In this document: positions 22,202-33,210 of the stretch, piece after piece | How the letters are laid out: each line of letters opens with the position of its first letter | Numbering within the stretch: position 1 is the first letter of the stretch | Virus record (IMG/VR): IMGVR_UViG_3300023179_000009 | Location: 248,001-312,000 of that record | Length of the DNA stretch: 64,000 nt | Reading direction: 5' to 3' (one strand) | Program-made: the position numbers and the translations under genes | Notes under the pieces: generated by a model | The model's database searches: none | The model's input: only the letters and a program-made list of their open reading frames with translations | What the model was told of the DNA's origin: nothing

Positions 22202-22891
22202 ATGTTTCTTGAATTAGTCACTAAAATTTGCATTGTGATATTTGCCGTTTCGATGGTTAAGGTTAAGGTGTCAAGCCCGGAGTTTGCTACTAATTTTGCT
22301 ATTGCGATGTTGGCTTTGAGTTTTTTGAGAGATTGGTATATTCGGCGTAATGAAATTTTTCGTATGTTGCCTACTTTTGGTTTTTGGTGGATTGTTACAT
22401 ACTTGATATTATTGCCATTAATGCCACTTTCAAAAACTTTGACGGGGCAATATTTTTTCAATGCATGGGAAACAGTTTTTGCAACATCAGTTTGTGCTTT
22501 TGCGTTCAGGGTATTCTTGATTGCCAATGAAGGTGTGGCACGTGCAATTATGACTTTGTTGGGTTTTGATAACAAAAGATTAGACAGGGTTCAGAGGACC
22601 ATGCAACAGAGATTTTATGGCAATGTCAGGAATAAAGGTAACAGTTGTGTGGTCGATGGTTCTTGTGGTATCAATAATTTTGTTCAGCCAGAGCAGGGGT
22701 ATTACTTATATGAATCGTGTGGAGAGCAAGGTTGTTGTTCTAGGTGCGGAGCAGTGGAGGTAAACTCTTTTGAACCTTGTTGGAACTGCGGGCTTGCCAA
22801 GCAACAAGTTGCCACTAGAAGATTTAAATGCAAATCTTGTAAGCCAAAAAATATAGATTTTAATTACACAAATGTTCAACCAAAAAGATGA
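22202..22891 (+). CDS. membrane protein with C-terminal Cys-rich domain
   Basis: About four hydrophobic segments, then CSRCG, CWNCG, CKSC. Confidence 0.55.
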   Translation: MFLELVTKICIVIFAVSMVKVKVSSPEFATNFAIAMLALSFLRDWYIRRNEIFRMLPTFGFWWIVTYLILLPLMPLSKTLTGQYFFNAWETVFATSVCAFAFRVFLIANEGVARAIMTLLGFDNKRLDRVQRTMQQRFYGNVRNKGNSCVVDGSCGINNFVQPEQGYYLYESCGEQGCCSRCGAVEVNSFEPCWNCGLAKQQVATRRFKCKSCKPKNIDFNYTNVQPKR

Positions 22892-24023
22892 TATGTTATG
22901 TACACAAAAGTATCTGCTGTCAGGCAAGACTTGTGATGATTTGAGTAATGAGTTTTGTATAAAAACTAATTTTCACCCAGATCTTCCTTTGGTCATTTTA
23001 AACTATGACCAAATTAATTCTCCTAAAAAACATCCTATTGTTAGGGAGTGTAGAGGTCTTGTTCTAAATAGTAGTGACTGGTCTTTAGTCGCTCGTTCTT
23101 TTCCTAGATTTTTTAATTGGGGAGAAGTTCCTGAAGAAATGGATTTCTTCGATTTTGATGATTTCGTTGTTCAATCCAAAGAAGACGGATCTTTAGTAAT
23201 CATTTATTTTTTCAATAATGAATGGCATGTAAACACAAAAGGTTCTTTTGCAACAGATATGATGCAGAATCAATCTTTTACTTGGAGACAAGCTGTTTGC
23301 AAAGGTTTAGGAATAAGCGATCTAAAAGATCTGAACTCCATATTGGATCCCAAATTAACTTACATTTGTGAGTTTGTTAGTCCTTGGAATAAAGTTGTAA
23401 GATATTACAAAAATCCACAAGTCTATCTACTGACTGCTTTTGAAGAACACAAGGAAATAGCATTAGAAAATATAGATGTTTCTAGAATTAAAGTTTTTCA
23501 AAATCTTGATATTTTTGAATTTAGAAGCATTCAACAAATTCAAAAATTTTTAGAAGAAAAATCTGTGAAAGATAAAACTTTTGAAGGTTTTGTGATTTGT
23601 GATAAAAACAAAAACAGATGGAAGATTAAGAATCCAAGTTATCTCTCTTTACACAAGATTAAAGGTGAAGGAGATAATCTATTTCATCCCAAATACTTAC
23701 TTCCATTTGTTCTAAAAAATGAAGCAGACGAGTTGTTTACTTATTTTGAAGAAGTAAAAGACCAATATTTTTCAATCAAAAATCAAGTAGATAATTTTTA
23801 CGAACAAACCTTAAAAGTTTGGCAAGAAAACAAGAACATAGAATCTCAAAAAGAATTTGCACTATCAATTCAACAAGAAGATTTCAAATCTGTCCTGTTT
23901 GATGTTCGAAAAAAGTACGGTCAAAACCAAACAGAAAAAAATTTGAGAGAAGAATTTTTAGCCCACCCAGATCTGATTCTAAAAAAATTGAAATCAAAGC
24001 AGTCCGTTTTTCAAGAATCTTAA
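22872..24023 (+). CDS. T4 Rnl1-like RNA ligase
   Basis: ECRGL, ARSFPRFFNWGE, motif I KEDGS, CEFVSP.N.VV, EGFV, KIK...Y. Confidence 0.85.
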   Translation: MFNQKDDMLCTQKYLLSGKTCDDLSNEFCIKTNFHPDLPLVILNYDQINSPKKHPIVRECRGLVLNSSDWSLVARSFPRFFNWGEVPEEMDFFDFDDFVVQSKEDGSLVIIYFFNNEWHVNTKGSFATDMMQNQSFTWRQAVCKGLGISDLKDLNSILDPKLTYICEFVSPWNKVVRYYKNPQVYLLTAFEEHKEIALENIDVSRIKVFQNLDIFEFRSIQQIQKFLEEKSVKDKTFEGFVICDKNKNRWKIKNPSYLSLHKIKGEGDNLFHPKYLLPFVLKNEADELFTYFEEVKDQYFSIKNQVDNFYEQTLKVWQENKNIESQKEFALSIQQEDFKSVLFDVRKKYGQNQTEKNLREEFLAHPDLILKKLKSKQSVFQES

Positions 24024-25147: not shown

Positions 25148-26338
25148 ATGAAATATCAAGTCAATTTGTCACGCACAATTTCTAAGCGTATCCGACCAGA
25201 AAAGATTCAAGCCCAAGTAGACTTTTTAATTCAAAGAGCCATGAACGGTAATCGTGGCAGGTGTTGGGCCTTTGAGTGCGAAAGCGTCAACGGTCCAGAA
25301 TCCACACCGGCTGGTTGGAAATATTCTTGTGATGTAAGTTTTGAAAAAACCAGCGGCAAAGGAATTGGTGGAGAAATTGAATTTAAACAGTGGCAAGATA
25401 TTAAAGCCATGTTAACCCAAACAGGCAAAAATTCAAAGTTCCAAGATAGCCCTTGGATAATCACCGACAATAACGAATCTTTCTCAGAATCGGATGTTGA
25501 AGAAAACAATAGCTCAGTTGACGGCGTAAGCACCGTTGCCGCTTGTGTTTCTGATAAAGTTTTGGATTGGCAGGATCTAAAGTTTCCAGAAGAATTACTT
25601 GAAGGTGATGAAGCACTTGCTGGTCATCCTGCTTTTTGTGATCTTTATGATTTGGGACCGCAAATTCGAACCGTGTTGTCGGCTATCAAGCGTGCAGTTG
25701 ATACAAACGGCGCTAGTAGATACCACTCTGTTTTGTATGGCGAACCTGGGTGTGGAAAGACTAGCACTCTTCGTGCAGTAGAAAAACTTTTCGGTCCTGG
25801 ATCGGTTTTGCATTTGGATGCCACAACCACAACCAAGGCTGGTATTGAGAAATTGTTTTTCAATGAGTTAAAGCAATACCCAAGGCTTGTTTTTCTTGAA
25901 GAAGCAGAGAAGGCACCCGAAGATGGTTTAAAGATTTGGTTAGGTGCCTTGGATGATCGTGGCGAACTTCGAAAGGTAAACTTTCGTCAAACGCAAGTGC
26001 GTGAGATACAGATATTGTTTTTTTGCACCGCCAATAACAAACGTGCTTTTGACAACATGATGGGAACCGGTAGCGGTGAACCTGGCGCATTGTCTAGTCG
26101 CTGTGTAAATGAAATTCAATTTCCTCGACCTGCCGAAAGTACACTTCGAAAGATTTTAGAAAAAGAAATTGATCTTAAAGGCGGAAACAAAAAATGGGTA
26201 ACTCCATGTTTGGATCTTGCTCGTGAATTAAAAGTTGCAGATCCAAGAAAAGTTAAAGCCTTCCTTACTGGCGGGGATAGACTTTTGGATGGATCTTTTC
26301 AAGAAGATCAAAGGTCAATTCGCAAAGTAAATGTTTGA
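25148..26338 (+). CDS. AAA-family ATPase
   Basis: VLYGEPGCGKT, VFLEEAEK, FCTAN, ALSSR. Confidence 0.75.
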   Translation: MKYQVNLSRTISKRIRPEKIQAQVDFLIQRAMNGNRGRCWAFECESVNGPESTPAGWKYSCDVSFEKTSGKGIGGEIEFKQWQDIKAMLTQTGKNSKFQDSPWIITDNNESFSESDVEENNSSVDGVSTVAACVSDKVLDWQDLKFPEELLEGDEALAGHPAFCDLYDLGPQIRTVLSAIKRAVDTNGASRYHSVLYGEPGCGKTSTLRAVEKLFGPGSVLHLDATTTTKAGIEKLFFNELKQYPRLVFLEEAEKAPEDGLKIWLGALDDRGELRKVNFRQTQVREIQILFFCTANNKRAFDNMMGTGSGEPGALSSRCVNEIQFPRPAESTLRKILEKEIDLKGGNKKWVTPCLDLARELKVADPRKVKAFLTGGDRLLDGSFQEDQRSIRKVNV

Positions 26339-28067: not shown

Positions 28068-29111
28068 GTGGACACTCAAGAAGATTTTGACTTTCTTAAA
28101 GCAATAGAAAACACAGAGCCCGACTTTGTTCGGGCATACCTTGGAGGCATTAAGTCAGATATGTCTAAGACAAATGTTCAACTTACCGTTCGTCAGTGCG
28201 CATCTTTACTTGGCGTTTGCCAGAATACTGTTCTCAACCACATCAAAGCAAACAAATTAAAAGCCAAACTTGTTGAAGGCCAGTGGTTTATACAAGAAAG
28301 CGATTTTGATTCATACAGGTCGTCTATTGTTGTTTCAAAAGGAAAAGATAGTCGTTCGATTATAAGATTTTCTAAAAAATCAAAAGAAACTAAAGTTTCT
28401 TCAAACAAAGAAGAGGTTCATGTCATGGATGAAAAAATTCGTTATCAAAAAGCAACCTCAAGAACTGTCACAGACTTTCTTCACGATTGGCACCGCAACA
28501 AGTCGTCCGGATTTTCCTTGTTGACTATTTGCAGAGACTTTAACCAAGTTTCAGCAAATCCAACCAATGAAAATCAGATGAGCGGGATTTTGTCATCGCT
28601 TAGAAACAAGGGAATAGTTATCCGCAAAGGCAAGGGCATTTACCAAGTTAGCCCTTCAATTGTCGGAGAAATAATTGAAGATCAATCGCATTCAACTACA
28701 GATACCACTCCAGAAACACAGGCAACTTTAATCGACACAGACATTGAGCAAATTCGCACTTCTTTGAAAAAGACTGAGCGAATGGCTGTTGAGGCTTTTA
28801 TAAGAAATCATGCTTCTCCCGGTGTTGATTTTTATTTTACAATCGCTGATGTTGCTCGTGAGTATCCGCATCTTGATCGCAACAAACTCGGCAAAGCTTG
28901 CGTTAACATGTGCCAAACCGGCAAACTTGTAAAGAGCCAAGGTTTGGGAGAATATGTTAAGCAAACTAAAGAAAACCATGTGCAAGAACGAAATCAGAGT
29001 GTCAAGCAACCTTCTACCGATAGCGTTCTTGAAAAAATTAATCGAATCATCAACTCTGACTTTGAAGATAAATTTAAAGAGGAACTTATAAAAGGAATTA
29101 TGCAAAATTAA
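28068..29111 (+). CDS. multi-HTH DNA-binding protein (excisionase-like HTH at N-terminus)
   Basis: LTVRQCASLLGVCQNTVLNHIKANKLKA..V.GQWFI; later wHTH-like LSSLRNKGIV...GKGIY; upstream TTGACG-16-TATCAT (28011-28038). Confidence 0.65.
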   Translation: MDTQEDFDFLKAIENTEPDFVRAYLGGIKSDMSKTNVQLTVRQCASLLGVCQNTVLNHIKANKLKAKLVEGQWFIQESDFDSYRSSIVVSKGKDSRSIIRFSKKSKETKVSSNKEEVHVMDEKIRYQKATSRTVTDFLHDWHRNKSSGFSLLTICRDFNQVSANPTNENQMSGILSSLRNKGIVIRKGKGIYQVSPSIVGEIIEDQSHSTTDTTPETQATLIDTDIEQIRTSLKKTERMAVEAFIRNHASPGVDFYFTIADVAREYPHLDRNKLGKACVNMCQTGKLVKSQGLGEYVKQTKENHVQERNQSVKQPSTDSVLEKINRIINSDFEDKFKEELIKGIMQN

Positions 29112-29117
29112 TTTTTC

Positions 29118-29154
29118 ATGGAAAAAAATCTTTTACCAAAAGAAGAACTAAATC
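29118..29154 (+). repeat. left copy of 37-bp direct repeat (mscL 5' end) flanking the cas-CRISPR cassette
   Basis: ATGGAAAAAAATCTTTTACCAAAAGAAGAACTAAATC, identical to 31770..31806. Confidence 0.95.
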
Positions 29155-29155
29155 T

Positions 29156-30781
29156 ATGTTAGAACAAGAAGAAAATAATTGTGTTGTTATTAAAGTTCCA
29201 TTGATTTGTAACCAAAAGCAAATTAAATTGCTTAAAAGTAGATTTAATTCTTCTAGAGTTTTTTATAATTCTTGTTTAGCAGAGTGCGAAAGAAGAAGGA
29301 AAATTCTTGTCGTTCATCCTAATCGTATCGAAGCCAATAGAATATACAAAGAATTAAAAGAAAAAGACAAACAAGTTAAAGAAAAAAAAATTACTAGAAG
29401 TTCTTATGACTTTAAAAAGAACAAAGAACTCTATAGTTCTCTTTATCGAAAATCTGAGAGGGAGACGGGTTTTTATTTAAGATCTAGTGCCACAAATGAT
29501 ATGACAAATTCTTTAGAACAATGGGTTTCGAATGTAAGAAATGGAACCAATATTGAAAAAGAGTTGGATAGCCACACCTGTATGACTTTAATGGATCGAG
29601 CATTTAAAGCATCTAAAAGAGTTTTAAATGCTCGATGGGTATTTAATAAGAAAAAAAACACTTACATAAAACCATCGGTTCAGTTTAAGAGTGTAAAAAA
29701 ACCAATCCTTAGCATTTCTAGCAAAAGCCAAAAATCTTCTCTTAAATTTTTATTAGAAAGCAAAACAATTCGGGTTCCTCATGTCGTTTGGACAATTAAC
29801 AAAAAAGCAATATGGCCTATTTTAAATTTGGACCCAATTGATCCTTATCATAACTTTTTAATTGAAAACTACCACAAAGTGGGTCATATTAAATTGTGTC
29901 GTGAAGAAATTAAAGGAAAGTGGGTTTATTCTATGCAGGCTACTTGTAGCATAGATTCAATGAGTAAATTTTATTTGGGAGTTAAACCAAAATATTTAGG
30001 TGAAGGTGTTTGTGGAGTTGATATTGGAGCAAGCGACTTTGCCTTTTCAGCACCGAACCACTCGGAAATTACAAAATTATTTCCGGAGTTTGATTTAGGT
30101 GTTGAGAAAAAGTTAAAGCAACTACACAAACAAAATTCTCGTATGCTCAGACAGAACAACCCAAACAATTTTGAGCCTGATACTTGGGAAAAAAATCCCA
30201 ATGGCAAACTAATTAAGAAATTTGGATCACAAAAAAAGGGTTGCAAAAATTTTATTAGCAAAAGGCACAAAAAAGTGCTACTTCAGATGAAGGAAATTTA
30301 TAGAAAACTCAAAGAAAGTCGTAGCATTTCTCATAAAAAAGCGGCAATTCGCTTACGTTCAAAAGCCGACAATCTAAGAATGGAAGATCTCAACTATTTT
30401 TCGTGGCAAAAAGGCGGCATGGGCAAATCATCCCAAATACGCTCTCCCGGACTATTTAGTAAAACTTTAGAGAACACATTCAAAAAAACCGGCGGTAAGG
30501 TTGAAAAAATTGATCCTTTTAAATCTTGTCTTTCGCAAATTTGTCCCAATTGCGGAAGCAAAAAAAAGAAAGAAAGAAGTCAGGATTGGCACGAGTGCGA
30601 AGAGTGCGGTTACGGTAAGAAATTTCCAGTTCAAAGAGACTTGAATTCTGCTATGCTTGCGTGTACAGTTGATTTGAAAACTCAAACTGTCGATGTGGAA
30701 GAAGCCAAAAAACTTCTTCGGGATAGAGGACCGATCCTGCGGACGACATCGGCTAGTTTTAAAAAAGGTGCGAAGAACTAG
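29156..30781 (+). CDS. compact type V CRISPR effector (TnpB/Cas12-like RuvC nuclease, 541 aa)
   Basis: TnpB-like N-terminus (R.FYN.CL), RuvC-I GVDIG (D289), RuvC-II MEDL (E410), Zn finger CPNC...CEEC, RuvC-III QRDLNSA (D495); adjacent to a CRISPR array. Confidence 0.85.
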   Translation: MLEQEENNCVVIKVPLICNQKQIKLLKSRFNSSRVFYNSCLAECERRRKILVVHPNRIEANRIYKELKEKDKQVKEKKITRSSYDFKKNKELYSSLYRKSERETGFYLRSSATNDMTNSLEQWVSNVRNGTNIEKELDSHTCMTLMDRAFKASKRVLNARWVFNKKKNTYIKPSVQFKSVKKPILSISSKSQKSSLKFLLESKTIRVPHVVWTINKKAIWPILNLDPIDPYHNFLIENYHKVGHIKLCREEIKGKWVYSMQATCSIDSMSKFYLGVKPKYLGEGVCGVDIGASDFAFSAPNHSEITKLFPEFDLGVEKKLKQLHKQNSRMLRQNNPNNFEPDTWEKNPNGKLIKKFGSQKKGCKNFISKRHKKVLLQMKEIYRKLKESRSISHKKAAIRLRSKADNLRMEDLNYFSWQKGGMGKSSQIRSPGLFSKTLENTFKKTGGKVEKIDPFKSCLSQICPNCGSKKKKERSQDWHECEECGYGKKFPVQRDLNSAMLACTVDLKTQTVDVEEAKKLLRDRGPILRTTSASFKKGAKN

Positions 30782-30980
30782 TACTCACTCTAATTGAAAA
30801 ATTAGTTTGCCGAAAAATCTACTTTTTAGAAAAACACCTAAAGAGTCAGAGTACCTCGTCCGTGAAACTACGAGCGATTTAGAATGACAGCCCTCATCGG
30901 AATAGTTTTAAATCGTCGTGGTCTCGTCTTTTGTTGCGAGAGGTACGGTGGCGTTAAAAACCGCCGTACCTCTCGTTTTT
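30782..30980 (+). ncRNA. putative tracrRNA (5' end uncertain)
   Basis: Anti-repeat CTCGTCTTTTGTT (30923-30935) pairs with repeat AACAAAAGATGAG (one G-U). TGACAGCCCTCATC (30885-30898) is partly complementary to the repeat 3' end. Long stem at about 30868-30885/30905-30921; ends in a terminator. Confidence 0.7.
30937..30980 (+). terminator. intrinsic terminator
   Basis: 15-bp stem CGAGAGGTACGGTGG / CCGCCGTACCTCTCG, 9-nt loop, followed by TTTTT. Confidence 0.8.
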
Positions 30981-31073
30981 ACTTAAATACTGTGTTGTCA
31001 ATGATTTACAGAACTCTTATTTTGTTTTTTGATATTTGATGGATCTAAATTTTAACAACCTCTCGCAAAGGTC

Positions 31074-31102
31074 TTGTTTTTTGTTGTGGTTTTTTGTATA
31101 AT
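31074..31102 (+). promoter_or_regulatory. sigma70-like promoter in CRISPR leader
   Basis: TTGTTT (31074-79) - 17 bp - TATAAT (31097-31102), 11 bp before repeat 1. Confidence 0.6.
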
Positions 31103-31113
31103 TTTAATGTGCT

Positions 31114-31772
31114 ATTGCAGTACTTAAAACAAAAGATGAGTATGTCAAGTGGTCTCTAGGGCATCGTTGGCGTCTCGGTAAACCAAATTGCAGTACTTAA
31201 AACAAAAGATGAGTATGTCAAGAGGGCATCGTTGGCGTCTCGGTAAACCAAATTGCAGTACTTAAAACAAAAGATGAGTATGTCAAGGACATTGAGAAGG
31301 TACTCGGAATCTTGTTCGGGGGATTGCAGTACTTAAAACAAAAGATGAGTATGTCAAGGTGCTGCTCAGGCGTTAGTGGAGGTTTGTTGGTAGCCAATTG
31401 CAGTACTTAAAACAAAAGATGAGTATGTCAAGAATTAGCGGCAGTACGAGCCACCGACCATCAGCAGATTGCAGTACTTAAAACAAAAGATGAGTATGTC
31501 AAGGAAACCCAAGTCCATAGACGCAAGAGGCAAAAACGGATTGCAGTACTTAAAACAAAAGATGAGTATGTCAAGTACCGATGGGCTACCAAAAACATCG
31601 CCAGGGCGGCAAAATTGCAGTACTTAAAACAAAAGATGAGTATGTCAAGATGACCAAGGCAAAAACCCGCCATTGCAGTACTTAAAACAAAAGATGAGTA
31701 TGTCAAGGTCAAGTGGCGTATTATTAGACAACGTGAGTTCTCATTGGATTTCAGTGCTTAAAACAAAAGATG
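31114..31772 (+). CRISPR. CRISPR array, 9 identical 36-bp repeats + 1 degenerate truncated repeat, 9 spacers
   Basis: Repeat ATTGCAGTACTTAAAACAAAAGATGAGTATGTCAAG at 31114, 31187, 31252, 31323, 31397, 31468, 31540, 31614, 31672. Partial ATTTCAGTGCTTAAAACAAAAGATG at 31748. Spacer lengths 37, 29, 35, 38, 35, 36, 38, 22, 40. Orientation taken from the leader, the degenerate trailer repeat and the anti-repeat. Confidence 0.97.
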
Positions 31773-32195
31773 GAAAAAAATCTTTTACCAAAAGAAGAAC
31801 TAAATCGTTATAAGCAATTTGCTTTTAAAGACGATATGTTCAAATTGGCTATAGGTTTTATTTTAGGCAATTCTTTCAATAATGTGGTTGGTGGAATTAG
31901 CAGTTTTCTAATTATGCCGGTGGTTAATTTTTTAACTACACAAACAGGAGAGAATTGGAGAACTATTGTTTTTTCGCCAGTGAGTGGTTTGGATTTTGAA
32001 CTAGGAAAACTTTTAGGAACTTTTGTAGATTTTTTACTAACATCTATTGTTCTTTATGTAATTTACGTTAAAATTTTAGGGTCAATAAAAAAACAAGAAG
32101 AAGATTGTAATTTGAAACAATGCAATCGTTGTCTAAGTTTAATTCATGTTGACGCAACAAGATGCAAGTTCTGCACCAGCCCAATTAAAAAATAA
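31770..32195 (+). CDS. mscL: large-conductance mechanosensitive channel MscL family protein
   Basis: YKQFAFK.D...LAIGFILGNSF..VV......IMP, G.LLG..VDFL; C-terminal C..C...I...ATRC.FCTS Zn ribbon; the ATG is supplied by the truncated last CRISPR repeat. Confidence 0.8.
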   Translation: MEKNLLPKEELNRYKQFAFKDDMFKLAIGFILGNSFNNVVGGISSFLIMPVVNFLTTQTGENWRTIVFSPVSGLDFELGKLLGTFVDFLLTSIVLYVIYVKILGSIKKQEEDCNLKQCNRCLSLIHVDATRCKFCTSPIKK

Positions 32196-32196
32196 C

Positions 32197-33210
32197 ATGA
32201 GAAAATTAGCATCTATACAAATTGTTAATTCAATTAAGCCTATCCCTAATGCAGATGCTATTGAATGTGTCGGTGTTCTTGGTTGGGAGTGTGTTTCAAA
32301 AAAAGGTGAATTCAAAGTTGGTGATAAATGTGTTTATTTTGAAATCGACAGTTTGCTACCAGAAACAGAAACATTCGAGTTTTTAAGAAAAAATTGCTAT
32401 AGAAAAGATCTTAAAAAGTTTAGATTAAAAACCGCTAAATTGCGTGGTCAACTTAGCCAAGGTCTCGCCCTGCCTTTGAGTTTATTCCCCGATCTATACC
32501 ACCTAGAGGCGTGTGCGGATGTCACCGATCTGCTGAATGTAGAAAAATATGAGCCTCCGATTCCGGCTCAAATTTCGGGCGATGCAAAGTCTTTTAGTTG
32601 GCCTATTGCGAAAACAGATGAGGTCAGAGTTCAGACCGATGAGGGCTTGAACTTGTTGGGTGCCCTTCACGGCAAGCCTTATTATTTAAGCCTTAAATTG
32701 GACGGAACGAGTTGTTCGTTTATCATAGATCCGTCAAACAAAGAATTTCATGTTTGTGGAAGAAATTATAGTTATAAAAACAAACCAAATCATAGTTTTT
32801 GGACAATAAATGAACGATACCAAGTAGAAGAACGATTGCGTTCAATTGGTGAAAATTTAGCCTTGCAGGGAGAATGTGTTGGCCCAGGTATTCAACAAAA
32901 TAAACTTGGATTACCTAACATTGATTATTACATATTTAATGTAGTTGATACTTCTACTCGCAAAAGACTATCTCTTGAAGATTCTTTGAGTGTCGTAAAA
33001 GAACTCAAAATGAATTTTGTTCCAATATTGGAAAAAGGCGATTCATTCAAATACAATATGGAACAGTTGCTTGAAAAAGCAAAAGGAAAGTATCGTGAAC
33101 ATTTTGAAAATGCAAAGCAGCATCAAGAGCGTGAAGGAATAGTGATTCGAAGTTTGTGCGGATCAGTTAGTTTCAAAGCCATAAATAACGAATTTCTCCT
33201 ACAAGAATAA
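32197..33210 (+). CDS. RNA ligase (ATP), DRB0094/Rnl2-like family
   Basis: MRKLASIQ..IKPIPNADAIE OB-like N-terminus, LRGQLSQGL, KTDE.R.Q, KLDGTS, QGE..GPGIQ.N, REGIV, FKAIN. Confidence 0.9.
   Translation: MRKLASIQIVNSIKPIPNADAIECVGVLGWECVSKKGEFKVGDKCVYFEIDSLLPETETFEFLRKNCYRKDLKKFRLKTAKLRGQLSQGLALPLSLFPDLYHLEACADVTDLLNVEKYEPPIPAQISGDAKSFSWPIAKTDEVRVQTDEGLNLLGALHGKPYYLSLKLDGTSCSFIIDPSNKEFHVCGRNYSYKNKPNHSFWTINERYQVEERLRSIGENLALQGECVGPGIQQNKLGLPNIDYYIFNVVDTSTRKRLSLEDSLSVVKELKMNFVPILEKGDSFKYNMEQLLEKAKGKYREHFENAKQHQEREGIVIRSLCGSVSFKAINNEFLLQE

What the first reader, a model, noticed from the sequence alone, without database searches (positions are those of the whole stretch)
30782..30980. Predicted tracrRNA with two anti-repeat segments, possibly an omega-RNA split into tracr + crRNA
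Seen: 30923-30935 (CUCGUCUUUUGUU) can form 13 bp with the repeat core AACAAAAGAUGAG, with the single mismatch being a G-U pair, which also fixes the strand. 30885-30898 (UGACA-gcc-CUCAUC), in the loop of a long stem, is complementary to the spacer-proximal repeat end GAUGAG-ua-UGUCA. A 15-bp hairpin plus U-run follows. Known: Cas12f/Cas12k guides use two repeat:anti-repeat duplexes, and TnpB omega-RNAs lie at the gene 3' end. Inference: a TnpB-to-Cas12 intermediate RNA from which an sgRNA could be designed.
Basis: partly seen in the sequence, partly recalled or inferred. Interest (0 to 1): 0.72.

Follow-up and report, generated by a model that had tools for sequence, protein, structure and literature searches.

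The report
Phage tracrRNA for a TnpB-like nuclease
Between a small TnpB-like nuclease gene and its CRISPR array in a 459-kb freshwater phage lies a conserved, structured RNA gene that pairs with the CRISPR repeat, a trans-activating RNA of the recently described kind in which a transposon guide RNA was split in two; it is a real but not unprecedented feature.

Summary
30923-30935 pairs with repeat positions 15-27 (13 bp, one G-U). A 16-bp hairpin plus U-run follows (30936-30980). The loop segment 30885-30898 matches the repeat's 3' end far better than chance (1 of 2000 shuffles).

The locus is a cas1/cas2-less type V system in a 458,813-bp phage: a 541-aa TnpB-like effector with an intact RuvC triad (29156-30781), this RNA, a 133-nt leader and a 10-repeat array (31114-31783).

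Comparative evidence supports a tracrRNA:
- The core is 95-97% identical in loci whose effector is 75% identical.
- In six lineages at 30-40% protein identity, the segment just 5' of the same terminator hairpin pairs with that lineage's own repeat.
- One arrayless relative joins both halves in a single hairpin, like an omega-RNA.

Corrections:
- The RNA probably starts inside the ORF, at or before 30739. A co-varying long-range stem and suppressed synonymous change support this.
- The two anti-repeats compete for GAUGAG, so only UGACA:UGUCA (pseudoknot-like) can coexist with the 13-bp duplex.
- Whether split or unsplit came first is unresolved.

No transcription data were found. This is a new member of the known TranC / type V-U kind.

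The parts
29156..30781 (+). Effector gene: 541-aa TnpB-like / miniature Cas12-like nuclease. RuvC residues D289, E410, D495; zinc ribbon C463, C466, C481, C484.
   Evidence: Pfam Cas12f1-like_TNB and HTH_OrfB. NCBIfam guided_TnpB below cut-off. Family profile hits LaTranC, Cas12n and ISDra2 TnpB with the catalytic motifs aligned. AF2 model pLDDT 91.6 with a TnpB/Cas12f fold.
30668..30781 (+). Last 36 codons of the ORF with suppressed synonymous divergence. Probable 5' part of the tracrRNA, overlapping the coding sequence.
   Evidence: 31 of 34 same-amino-acid codons are identical between the window and L001, against about 0.6 elsewhere. Nucleotide identity is 0.92-0.97 against a gene mean of about 0.77.
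30739..30746 (+). 5' strand (GCGGACGA) of the long-range stem S1, inside the ORF (L-R-T codons).
   Evidence: Pairs with 30856-30863. In L015, L011, L016, L010 and L009 a different 5' strand finds its best partner at the homologous site.
30818..30850 (+). Hairpin H2, 12 bp.
   Evidence: One pair changed on both sides and several G-U / Watson-Crick switches among the three close locus groups. An equivalent hairpin is read by eye in relatives.
30856..30863 (+). 3' strand (UCGUCCGU) of stem S1, directly after the family-conserved GAGUnAGAG motif.
30864..30922 (+). Long hairpin H3, about 20 bp, nearly invariant in the close relatives.
   Evidence: One G-C to G-U change at 30914 in L001 fits the + strand.
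30885..30898 (+). Anti-repeat 2 in the H3 apical loop. UGACA pairs with the repeat's UGUCA (positions -7 to -3 from the spacer), a candidate pseudoknot strand. CUCAUC can pair with GAUGAG.
   Evidence: -14.6 kcal/mol, 1 of 2000 shuffles, best of 387 windows. Conserved in L001 and L004 with C to U, keeping a G-U.
30923..30935 (+). Anti-repeat 1: 13 bp with repeat positions 15-27.
   Evidence: Cognate-specific pairing across lineages.
30936..30980 (+). Intrinsic terminator: 16-bp hairpin plus U5. Presumed tracrRNA 3' end.
   Evidence: Two pairs changed on both sides in L001. The same GCGAG[A/C]GG hairpin plus U-run occurs in L011, L012, L015 and L017, with a variant arm in L018.
30981..31113 (+). 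Array leader. It contains a second copy of the terminator's 3' arm (ACCTCTCGCAA, 31058-31068), a -10-like TATAAT (31097-31102) and two U-rich anti-repeat-like stretches (31011-31031, 31073-31085).
31114..31783 (+). CRISPR array: nine identical 36-nt repeats plus a degenerate tenth (31748-31783), and nine spacers of 22-40 nt.

Best explanation
The stretch from about 30739 (or a little earlier, inside the effector ORF) to the terminator at 30980 encodes a tracrRNA of roughly 240 nt on the + strand.

Proposed origin (inferred): it is cut from, or made together with, the 3' end of the effector mRNA and ends at the intrinsic terminator.

Proposed fold: a closing long-range stem (30739-46 : 30856-63), inner hairpins, a long hairpin (30864-30922), then a single-stranded anti-repeat (30923-35).

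Proposed pairing with the crRNA: the array is transcribed from its own leader. Each repeat pairs through AACAAAAGAUGAG with the anti-repeat. The repeat's UGUCA, two nucleotides before the spacer, pairs with UGACA in the long hairpin's loop. This gives the pseudoknot-next-to-guide geometry of TnpB omega-RNA and Cas12f guides. The 541-aa RuvC-active TnpB-like protein binds the two-RNA scaffold and cuts DNA matching the spacer.

The RNA is therefore the scaffold half of an omega-RNA whose last stem-loop is split, making this a TranC-like / type V-U system carried by a huge phage without cas1 or cas2.

Shown here: the sequence complementarities, conservation, covariation, protein fold and catalytic residues. 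Inferred: transcription, RNA ends, processing, the pseudoknot, and nuclease activity.
For: (1) Layout: effector gene, structured RNA, terminator, leader, array, all on one strand. The degenerate repeat sits at the far end of the array.

(2) Conservation: the non-coding core 30851-30940 is 95-97% identical to L001, whose effector is 75% identical. L004 has the same layout.

(3) Anti-repeat co-evolution: the 24 nt 5' of the terminator arm pair with the cognate repeat at -18 to -22 kcal/mol in the window group and L015, against -5 to -11 for non-cognate pairs. L012, L011, L017 and L018 have different anti-repeat and repeat sequences at the same position.

(4) Compensatory changes in the terminator hairpin and in the long-range stem, whose best partner falls at the homologous site in six lineages.

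(5) The last 36 codons show 91% synonymous identity against about 60% elsewhere.

(6) The repeats have no conserved hairpin of their own.

(7) L016, a relative at 37% identity without an array, has anti-repeat, UAAC loop and repeat half as one hairpin, followed by A-GGCCA-AG and unique sequence at the stop codon.

(8) The architecture matches ISDra2 omega-RNA and Cas12f guides: stem 4 corresponds to repeat:anti-repeat, and a 5-bp pseudoknot lies next to the guide (PMC10097598).

(9) The protein is TnpB/TranC/Cas12n-like with an intact D-E-D triad.
Against: - No RNA evidence. No listed RNA run holds the stretch, and three metatranscriptomes from a study whose DNA run holds the phage laid nothing on it.
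- No sigma-70-like promoter was found for the RNA.
- No protospacer was found, so activity and PAM are unknown.
- The core is nearly invariant in the three close locus groups, so H3 and anti-repeat 2 have almost no covariation.
- In distant relatives the repeat tail's best partner is a CUUUGGUC motif elsewhere in the scaffold, not an H3 loop.
- The long-range stem is not evident at the homologous site in L012, L017 or L018.
- The 13-bp match alone has about 4.5% chance expectation in this U-rich region.
Confidence: 0.75

Rival explanations
1. The functional guide is one read-through transcript, not two RNAs. Transcription passes the hairpin at 30936-30975. The scaffold stays covalently linked through the leader to the first repeat, possibly with the 11-nt complementarity between 30934-30944 and 31058-68 closing a long loop. 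The locus would then act mainly as an omega-RNA with its first spacer, and the other repeats would be used in trans or not at all.
For: - The leader copy of the hairpin's 3' arm is conserved in the window group, L011, L012 and L015/L014, with a degenerate copy read by eye in L018 and a weaker one in L017. It is absent from the loci without a separate terminator hairpin.
- Its 10-mer occurs nowhere else in the 459-kb genome.
- L014 and L017 carry a single repeat after the same leader.
- L010 has its first unit as a cis hairpin.
Against: - A 16-bp GC-rich hairpin with a U-run is a strong terminator signal.
- It is kept, with compensatory changes, in six lineages.
- The intramolecular hairpin is much more stable than the 11-bp alternative.
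- Nine identical repeats are maintained.
- A conserved -10-like box lies 11 nt before the first repeat.
Confidence: 0.12
2. The region is only the 3' UTR and terminator of the effector gene. The effector uses crRNA alone, and the complementarities to the repeat are by-products of U-rich against A-rich composition.
For: - The 13-bp run has about 4.5% chance expectation.
- Two other U-rich leader stretches also pair with the repeat.
- There are no expression data.
Against: - The anti-repeat changes together with the repeat in several lineages, at a fixed position.
- The core is more conserved than the protein-coding sequence.
- The bipartite loop match has p about 5e-4.
- The repeats lack a conserved hairpin.
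- The TnpB, Cas12f, Cas12n and TranC relatives described in the papers read here use long scaffolds: an omega-RNA, or a tracrRNA with crRNA.
Confidence: 0.05
3. The tracrRNA is real, but the second anti-repeat (30885-30898) is not a repeat-pairing element. It would be a protein-contact loop, and the guide-adjacent pseudoknot would form with another segment or not at all.
For: - There is no covariation for it.
- It competes with anti-repeat 1 for GAUGAG.
- In L016, L012, L009 and L015 the repeat tail's best partner lies in a different scaffold element.
Against: - The match is the best of 387 windows, and 1 of 2000 shuffles reaches it.
- UGACA and UGUCA are both invariant in three locus groups whose repeats differ at neighbouring positions.
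- The -7 to -3 position mirrors the ISDra2 pseudoknot at -6 to -2.
Confidence: 0.3

Closest known systems
TranC systems (transposon-CRISPR intermediates; Jin et al., Cell 2025, doi 10.1016/j.cell.2025.09.004, as cited; LaTranC structures 9jfo/9jfq)
   Same: - A TnpB-like protein of 300-600 aa beside a CRISPR array without adaptation genes.
- The guide is a tracrRNA plus crRNA, understood as a functionally split transposon right-end/omega RNA.
- The 36-nt repeat and short array fall in the ranges reported for clades 11 and 20.
- A phage-borne example (CauTranC9) is already known.
- The family profile hits LaTranC at E about 1e-22.
   Different: - Similarity to LaTranC covers only the RuvC/TNB half and is no better than to TnpB-derived proteins, so this is probably another clade.
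- Placement among the published clades could not be tested, because their sequences are not held.
- Use of both RNA forms, shown for TranC, is untested here.
- Here the tracr 5' part seems to overlap the ORF, and a conserved inverted repeat brackets the terminator-leader segment.
ISDra2 TnpB omega-RNA (PMC10097598; PDB 8h1j, 8exa)
   Same: - The scaffold overlaps the nuclease ORF's 3' end.
- The order of elements matches: closing stem, inner hairpins, a last stem equivalent to repeat:anti-repeat, then a 5-bp pseudoknot strand 2 nt from the guide.
- The catalytic D-E-D triad and zinc ribbon align.
- TM by target is 0.66-0.68.
   Different: - Here the last stem is split between two transcripts and the 3' half is repeated ten times with different guides.
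- No TnpA and no recognisable transposon ends.
- The protein is about 130 aa longer.
Cas12f (type V-F) tracrRNA:crRNA
   Same: A miniature effector with a tracrRNA between the gene and the array, and two repeat:anti-repeat contacts, one of which is the pseudoknot. The fold is similar, TM about 0.5-0.55 by query.
   Different: Sequence similarity is confined to the TNB zinc ribbon, E 1e-5 to 1e-8 against 1e-15 to 1e-22 for TnpB, TranC and Cas12n. Dimer use is unknown.
Cas12n (type V-N; PDB 9j09)
   Same: An early-branching TnpB-like effector whose tracrRNA is encoded within the 3' end of its own ORF. Profile hit E 1.8e-19.
   Different: The Cas12n tracr lies in a disordered, dispensable C-terminal tail. 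Here the C-terminal helix 514-540 is modelled with confidence, and most of the scaffold lies past the stop codon.
Type V-U* branches of Altae-Tran et al. 2023 (PMC10691335)
   Same: CRISPR-associated TnpB clades with the array downstream of the gene, no cas1/2/4, short arrays, and many known only from metagenomes.
   Different: Assignment to a numbered V-U branch could not be tested. V-U24, noted there for an HTH partner, has a non-canonical RuvC-I, whereas D289 here is canonical.

Membership tests
Type V CRISPR-Cas (Cas12-type effector with array) | Single effector with a TnpB-like split RuvC domain and intact D-E-D | tested here: met
   D289, E410 and D495 align with the ISDra2 TnpB and LaTranC catalytic motifs. 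The fold matches Cas12f and TnpB.
Type V CRISPR-Cas (Cas12-type effector with array) | Adjacent CRISPR array, co-oriented, downstream of the effector | tested here: met
   Ten repeats at 31114-31783. The same layout occurs in L001, L004 and L015.
TranC (transposon-CRISPR intermediate) | Protein architecture essentially that of TnpB, with TnpB relatives close by | tested here: met
   Structure TM 0.80 to a bacterial 'ISChy9 OrfB transposase' cluster. NCBIfam guided_TnpB is the top hit. An arrayless relative, L016, exists at 37% identity.
TranC (transposon-CRISPR intermediate) | Guide is a tracrRNA plus crRNA that together reproduce the right-end/omega-RNA scaffold | tested here: met
   In silico only. 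Anti-repeat and repeat co-evolve. The unsplit hairpin in L016 has the same order of elements. The scaffold is homologous to ORF-3' sequence of relatives.
TranC (transposon-CRISPR intermediate) | Nuclease can be guided both by CRISPR RNAs and by a single reRNA | not testable with these tools
   Needs biochemistry or interference assays.
TranC (transposon-CRISPR intermediate) | Falls within one of the published TranC clades | not tested
   Clade sequences are not held. Only LaTranC could be compared: E 1e-22, RuvC half only.
Cas12f (type V-F) | Sequence membership in the Cas12f branch | tested here: not met
   The family profile hits Cas12f chains only over the roughly 60-aa TNB region, at E 1e-5 to 1e-8, weaker than TnpB, TranC and Cas12n. 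No hit with the single sequence.
Cas12f (type V-F) | Asymmetric homodimer on one guide RNA | not testable with these tools
   No verdict is available for protein-RNA assemblies. Not attempted.
IS200/IS605-IS607 TnpB with omega-RNA | Mobile element context: TnpA and/or transposon ends, with a single guide at the right end | tested here: not met
   No Y1 transposase anywhere in the genome. Serine recombinases were not searched genome-wide. The flanking genes scanned are an HTH_17 gene, mscL, an AAA ATPase, a 384-aa ORF without a Pfam match and RNA ligases. There are ten repeats rather than one guide.
tracrRNA (functional definition) | Separately expressed small RNA that pairs with the repeat and is needed for crRNA use | tested here: inconclusive
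   Pairing and covariation are shown. For expression, no listed RNA run holds the stretch and nothing was laid from three metatranscriptomes. Rfam has no match.

The most novel reading that the evidence does not exclude
The 11-nt inverted repeat TTGCGAGAGGT (30934-30944) / ACCTCTCGCAA (31058-31068) begins inside the last two bases of the anti-repeat and ends about 45 nt before the first repeat. A copy of the terminator's 3' arm is kept in the leader of the window group, L011, L012 and L015/L014, with degenerate copies in L018 and L017. The loci without a separate terminator hairpin lack it.

This could be the footprint of the event that split the ancestral omega-RNA: insertion of a terminator-plus-promoter cassette into the loop of its last stem. 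The repeat may still work, for example by letting read-through transcripts refold into a single-RNA guide, or by tethering the tracrRNA to the pre-crRNA leader. That would give a concrete molecular route for the step from omega-RNA to tracr and crRNA.
Probability: 0.15. Interest if true: 0.65.

Novelty: new member of a known kind. Interest (0 to 1): 0.5.

Why it matters
The locus is a natural, well-preserved example of a TnpB-sized nuclease working with a split guide, carried by a huge phage that has no spacer-acquisition genes.

Its protein family, at 30-40% identity, appears to hold every stage side by side:
- a single fused guide (L016);
- 20-26-nt mini-repeats abutting the gene (L009, L010);
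- one repeat behind a terminator and leader (L014, L017);
- full arrays (window, L001, L004, L015).

That makes the family a convenient comparative set for asking how CRISPR arrays and tracrRNAs arise from omega-RNAs. The mapped pairings also give the information needed to try a single-guide design for a 541-aa nuclease. The principle itself (TranC, type V-U) is already published, so the value lies in a new lineage and in anatomical detail rather than in a new concept.

Tried and rejected
- Rfam at E up to 1 over 29000-32500: no family.
- The single-sequence PDB search gave nothing useful. The single-sequence AF2 model was unusable, pLDDT 34, and was replaced by an alignment-based model.
- The search for related loci in viral contigs with the protein found nothing. 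The exact tracr-core pattern found only the source contig.
- GenBank phages hold only ordinary TnpB hits at 24-34% identity over part of the protein.
- Protospacers: blastn of the array against phages gave only chance-level hits. Exact searches with two spacer stretches in viral contigs, and one of them in prokaryote genomes, found nothing. Targets and PAM remain unknown.
- Transcription: no listed RNA run holds the stretch, and nothing was laid from three metatranscriptomes of a study whose DNA run carries the phage. This is no evidence of absence.
- A strict Watson-Crick 5-mer partner for the repeat tail was not found in L009, L010 or L016. In L015 it lies only in the terminator arm. With G-U allowed, a common CUUUGGUC-type partner appears in four lineages, but it competes with a local hairpin. 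I did not build on it.
- A tree of 36 relatives does not resolve whether the split layout arose once, or whether the fused form is ancestral. Re-fusion of tracrRNA and half-repeat is documented in another clade.
- Filing the effector under Cas12f was considered and rejected on sequence grounds.
- The leader stretches 31011-31031 and 31073-31085 were considered as alternative anti-repeats. They were set aside because they are not conserved in L001.
- No covariance model was built. The three close sequences are nearly identical, and the distant ones do not align automatically.

Full report
**Setting.** The window is bases 248001-312000 of a 458,813-bp IMG/VR virus record, 35% GC and estimated 91% complete. 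Near-identical DNA occurs in lake and freshwater metagenomes. Around the finding, every gene runs on the + strand:
- an HTH_17 protein gene (28068-29111);
- a 541-aa ORF (29156-30781) with the Pfam domains Cas12f1-like_TNB and HTH_OrfB_IS605;
- 332 non-coding bases;
- a CRISPR array;
- an MscL homologue gene and an RNA ligase gene.

The array has nine identical 36-nt repeats from 31114 and a degenerate tenth at 31748-31783. The nine spacers are 22-40 nt long. The degenerate repeat at the far end, the AT-rich leader with a TATAAT at 31097-31102, and the gene order all point to + strand transcription. The spacer then lies 3' of the repeat, as in type V systems.

**Checking the observation.**
- 30923-30935 pairs with repeat positions 15-27 over 13 bp with one G-U. 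Cofolding forms exactly this duplex, ddG about -13.5 kcal/mol.
- In this U-rich spacer region, a run that long appears in 4.5% of dinucleotide shuffles when G-U is allowed. The single match would not be convincing without comparative support.
- 30885-30898 sits in the apical loop of a roughly 20-bp hairpin. Its two-part match to the repeat's last 15 nt scores -14.6 kcal/mol. One of 2000 shuffled loops reaches that value, and it is the best of 387 windows across the gene and intergenic region.
- A 16-bp hairpin (30936-51 / 30961-76) with a U5 run follows.
- The region folds far better than shuffles, z = -6.8.

One logical point needs correcting. Both anti-repeats use the repeat's GAUGAG, so they cannot both form in full. 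What can coexist is the 13-bp duplex plus UGACA:UGUCA.

**The protein.**
- The single sequence finds nothing in the PDB.
- A search of 1.8 billion representatives gives 297 relatives at E of 1e-10 or better. Most of the best 150 listed are 450-580 aa.
- A profile of 36 of them hits LaTranC (about 1e-22), Cas12n (1.8e-19) and ISDra2 TnpB (1e-15). Cas12f is hit only over the zinc ribbon, at 1e-5 to 1e-8.
- The RuvC motifs align. D289, E410 and D495 are present, as is the CxxC...CxxC ribbon.
- The alignment-based AF2 model (pLDDT 91.6) matches Cas12f, Cas12p, TnpB and TranC structures at TM about 0.5 by query and up to 0.75 by target.
- It matches a bacterial 'ISChy9 OrfB transposase' cluster at TM 0.80.

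So this is a long TnpB-type protein, not a member of the Cas12f branch. The phage genome has no Cas1, Cas2 or Y1 TnpA.

**Close relatives.** Two locus groups have the same layout: L001-L003 (effector 75% identical) and L004 (82% identical over the 80% of the protein aligned).
- The non-coding core 30851-30940 is 95-97% identical to L001, while the gene averages about 77%.
- In both groups anti-repeat 1 is perfect Watson-Crick.
- The terminator hairpin carries two pairs changed on both sides plus G-U/A-U switches.
- The G-U pairs fit only the + strand.
- The repeats differ at their 5' ends and at the two bases between GAUGAG and UGUCA. The pairing blocks are invariant.

**The RNA starts inside the ORF.** Three observations support this.
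- The last 36 codons keep 31 of 34 synonymous codons identical between the window and L001, against about 60% elsewhere. Nucleotide identity there is 92-97%.
- The consensus fold pairs GCGGACGA (30739-46, the L-R-T codons) with UCGUCCGU (30856-63).
- In L015, L011, L016, L010 and L009 the corresponding codons differ, yet the best complementary partner within 200 nt falls each time directly after the same conserved GAGUnAGAG...GAU motif. Examples are GCAGGCGG:UCGCCUGU in L015 and UUACGAAUGG:UCAUUCGUAA in L016.

In those relatives the motif is part of the ORF (protein motif SELERI). In L015 it is conserved at the nucleotide level in a different reading frame, which points to constraint on the RNA. 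The stem is not evident at that site in L012, L017 or L018. The window lineage has a shorter ORF plus about 60 extra non-coding bases, so most of the scaffold lies past the stop codon. An RNA scaffold overlapping the nuclease's 3' end is the omega-RNA arrangement. Cas12n has it too.

**The anti-repeat co-evolves with the repeat.** In the window group, L015/L014, L011, L012, L017 and L018 the order is always long hairpin, short single-stranded segment, a GCGAG[A/C]GG-type hairpin (variant arm in L018) with a U-run, about 90-150 nt of leader, then the repeat. The segment before the hairpin differs between lineages and pairs with that lineage's own repeat.
- Cognate energies are -18 to -22 kcal/mol for the window group and L015, against -5 to -11 for non-cognate pairs.
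- L018 gives -14.2 and L017 -11.6.
- L012 gives a 12-bp run. L012 and L011 end inside their first repeat and are less clear.

This is the strongest evidence that 30923-30935 is a true anti-repeat. The repeats have no conserved hairpin of their own, which fits dependence on a partner RNA.

**Fused and intermediate forms.**
- L016 (37% identical, no array in 7.6 kb) ends its ORF in a hairpin: AACCAUUU, loop UAAC, AAGUGGUU. This is followed by A-GGCCA-AG and unique sequence. That is anti-repeat, loop, repeat half, tail and guide in one RNA, the order found in ISDra2 omega-RNA. There, stem 4 corresponds to the Cas12f repeat:anti-repeat and a 5-bp pseudoknot lies at -6 to -2.
- In the window the tail UGUCA lies at -7 to -3.
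- L010 has such a cis hairpin followed by two more 21-nt copies of its 3' half. L009 has an anti-repeat and 20-26-nt repeats with about 18-27-nt spacers.
- L014 encodes the same protein as L015 but has one repeat where L015 has at least 13.
- L017 also has one repeat.

The family thus shows fused, mini-array, single-repeat and full-array states. A tree of 36 members leaves the base unresolved and intersperses the states. Re-fusion of a tracrRNA with a half-repeat is documented in another clade. The direction of change therefore stays open.

**The second anti-repeat.** UGACA:UGUCA fits the expected pseudoknot geometry and is statistically supported, but both sides are invariant in the three close locus groups. 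The window has a G-U in anti-repeat 1 and a perfect CUCAUC in the loop. L001 and L004 have the reverse. That is compatible with the two segments sharing GAUGAG, but with two lineages it is only an anecdote. In L016, L012, L009 and L015 the repeat tail's best partner is a CUUUGGUC-type motif in another scaffold element. If the pseudoknot exists in the window lineage, its partner has moved. I put about 0.5 on UGACA:UGUCA forming in the active complex.

**Comparison with what is known.** The idea that type V systems arose when a transposon right-end/omega RNA was functionally split into tracrRNA and crRNA, with TnpB-like 'TranC' nucleases as intermediates, was published in 2025 (Jin et al., cited). 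It included a LaTranC structure, many clades, and later a phage-borne member. Forty CRISPR-associated TnpB branches (V-U6 to V-U45) with downstream arrays and no adaptation genes were catalogued in 2023. The present locus fits that kind in every feature I could test. Its clade could not be determined. It is not Cas12f by sequence, and it lacks the transposon context of TnpB.

**Unexplained.** A copy of the terminator's 3' arm sits in the leader (ACCTCTCGCAA, 31058-68), 46 nt before the first repeat. With 30934-44 it forms an 11-nt inverted repeat whose 10-mer occurs nowhere else in the genome. A leader copy is present in the window group, L011, L012 and L015/L014 and absent from L009, L010 and L016. 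Degenerate copies are read by eye in L018 and, more weakly, in L017. It follows the hairpin's sequence in L011 but not in L012. It could be a regulatory site, a read-through refolding element, or a scar of the split.

**Limits.** No RNA data exist for this phage in the runs offered. No protospacers were found. The RNA ends, processing, PAM and nuclease activity are all inferred.

**Verdict.** It is a new member of a known kind. Interest 0.5.

Noticed in passing
window 30934-30944 and 31058-31068: An 11-nt perfect inverted repeat (TTGCGAGAGGT / ACCTCTCGCAA) starts inside the last two bases of the anti-repeat and ends 46 nt before the first repeat. The 10-mer occurs nowhere else in the 459-kb genome. 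A leader copy of the terminator's 3' arm is kept in the window group, L011, L012 and L015/L014 and is absent from L009, L010 and L016. Degenerate copies are read by eye in L018 and L017.
   Followed up: partly
window 31150-31251: Spacer 2 (29 nt) is identical to the last 29 nt of spacer 1 (37 nt). Spacer lengths range from 22 to 40 nt, and the genome has no Cas1 or Cas2. Together these suggest irregular array growth, such as duplication or recombination, or acquisition by host enzymes.
   Followed up: partly
window 31748-31783: The degenerate terminal repeat overlaps the ATG (31770) of an MscL-family channel gene (31770-32195). The array runs straight into the next gene.
   Followed up: no
window 31011-31031 and 31073-31085: Two further U-rich leader segments can pair with the repeat core, one over 13 positions with three G-U. 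They are not conserved in L001. If the leader is transcribed they could fold back on the first repeat.
   Followed up: partly
L014:2616-2905 versus L015:2667-3751: Two contigs encode the identical 525-aa relative with the same tracr and leader. One has a single repeat followed by a DNA polymerase III alpha gene, and the other has at least 13 repeats. This is an array presence/size polymorphism.
   Followed up: partly
L015:2600-2625 versus L011:4490-4516: The scaffold motif GAGUnAGAG..GGAUCG is conserved at the nucleotide level, although L015 reads it in a different frame (SQSGSP) from its relatives (SELERI). This points to RNA-level constraint.
   Followed up: partly
own genome outside the window: G000:C1 about 25888, 189875, 232766, 456664: Four more TnpB-like ORFs (387-423 aa, strong TNB domain hits) lie in the same phage genome, with no Y1 transposase anywhere. 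Their guide RNAs were not examined.
   Followed up: no
window 28068-29111: A 347-aa HTH_17 protein gene sits directly upstream of the effector. A 347-aa HTH_17 gene holds the same position in L001-L003, but not in L004, L014/L015 or the other relatives. It is a possible regulator of the locus.
   Followed up: no
window 22872-24023 and 32146-33210: Two different RNA ligase genes flank the locus: a T4 Rnl1-type and a PHA02142 OB-fold plus RNA_ligase type. An AAA ATPase gene lies at 25148-26338.
   Followed up: no
L005:4691-4790: A distant relative (26% identity) has a terminator hairpin after its gene, followed by two tandem copies of a roughly 25-nt unit. It has no obvious array.
   Followed up: no
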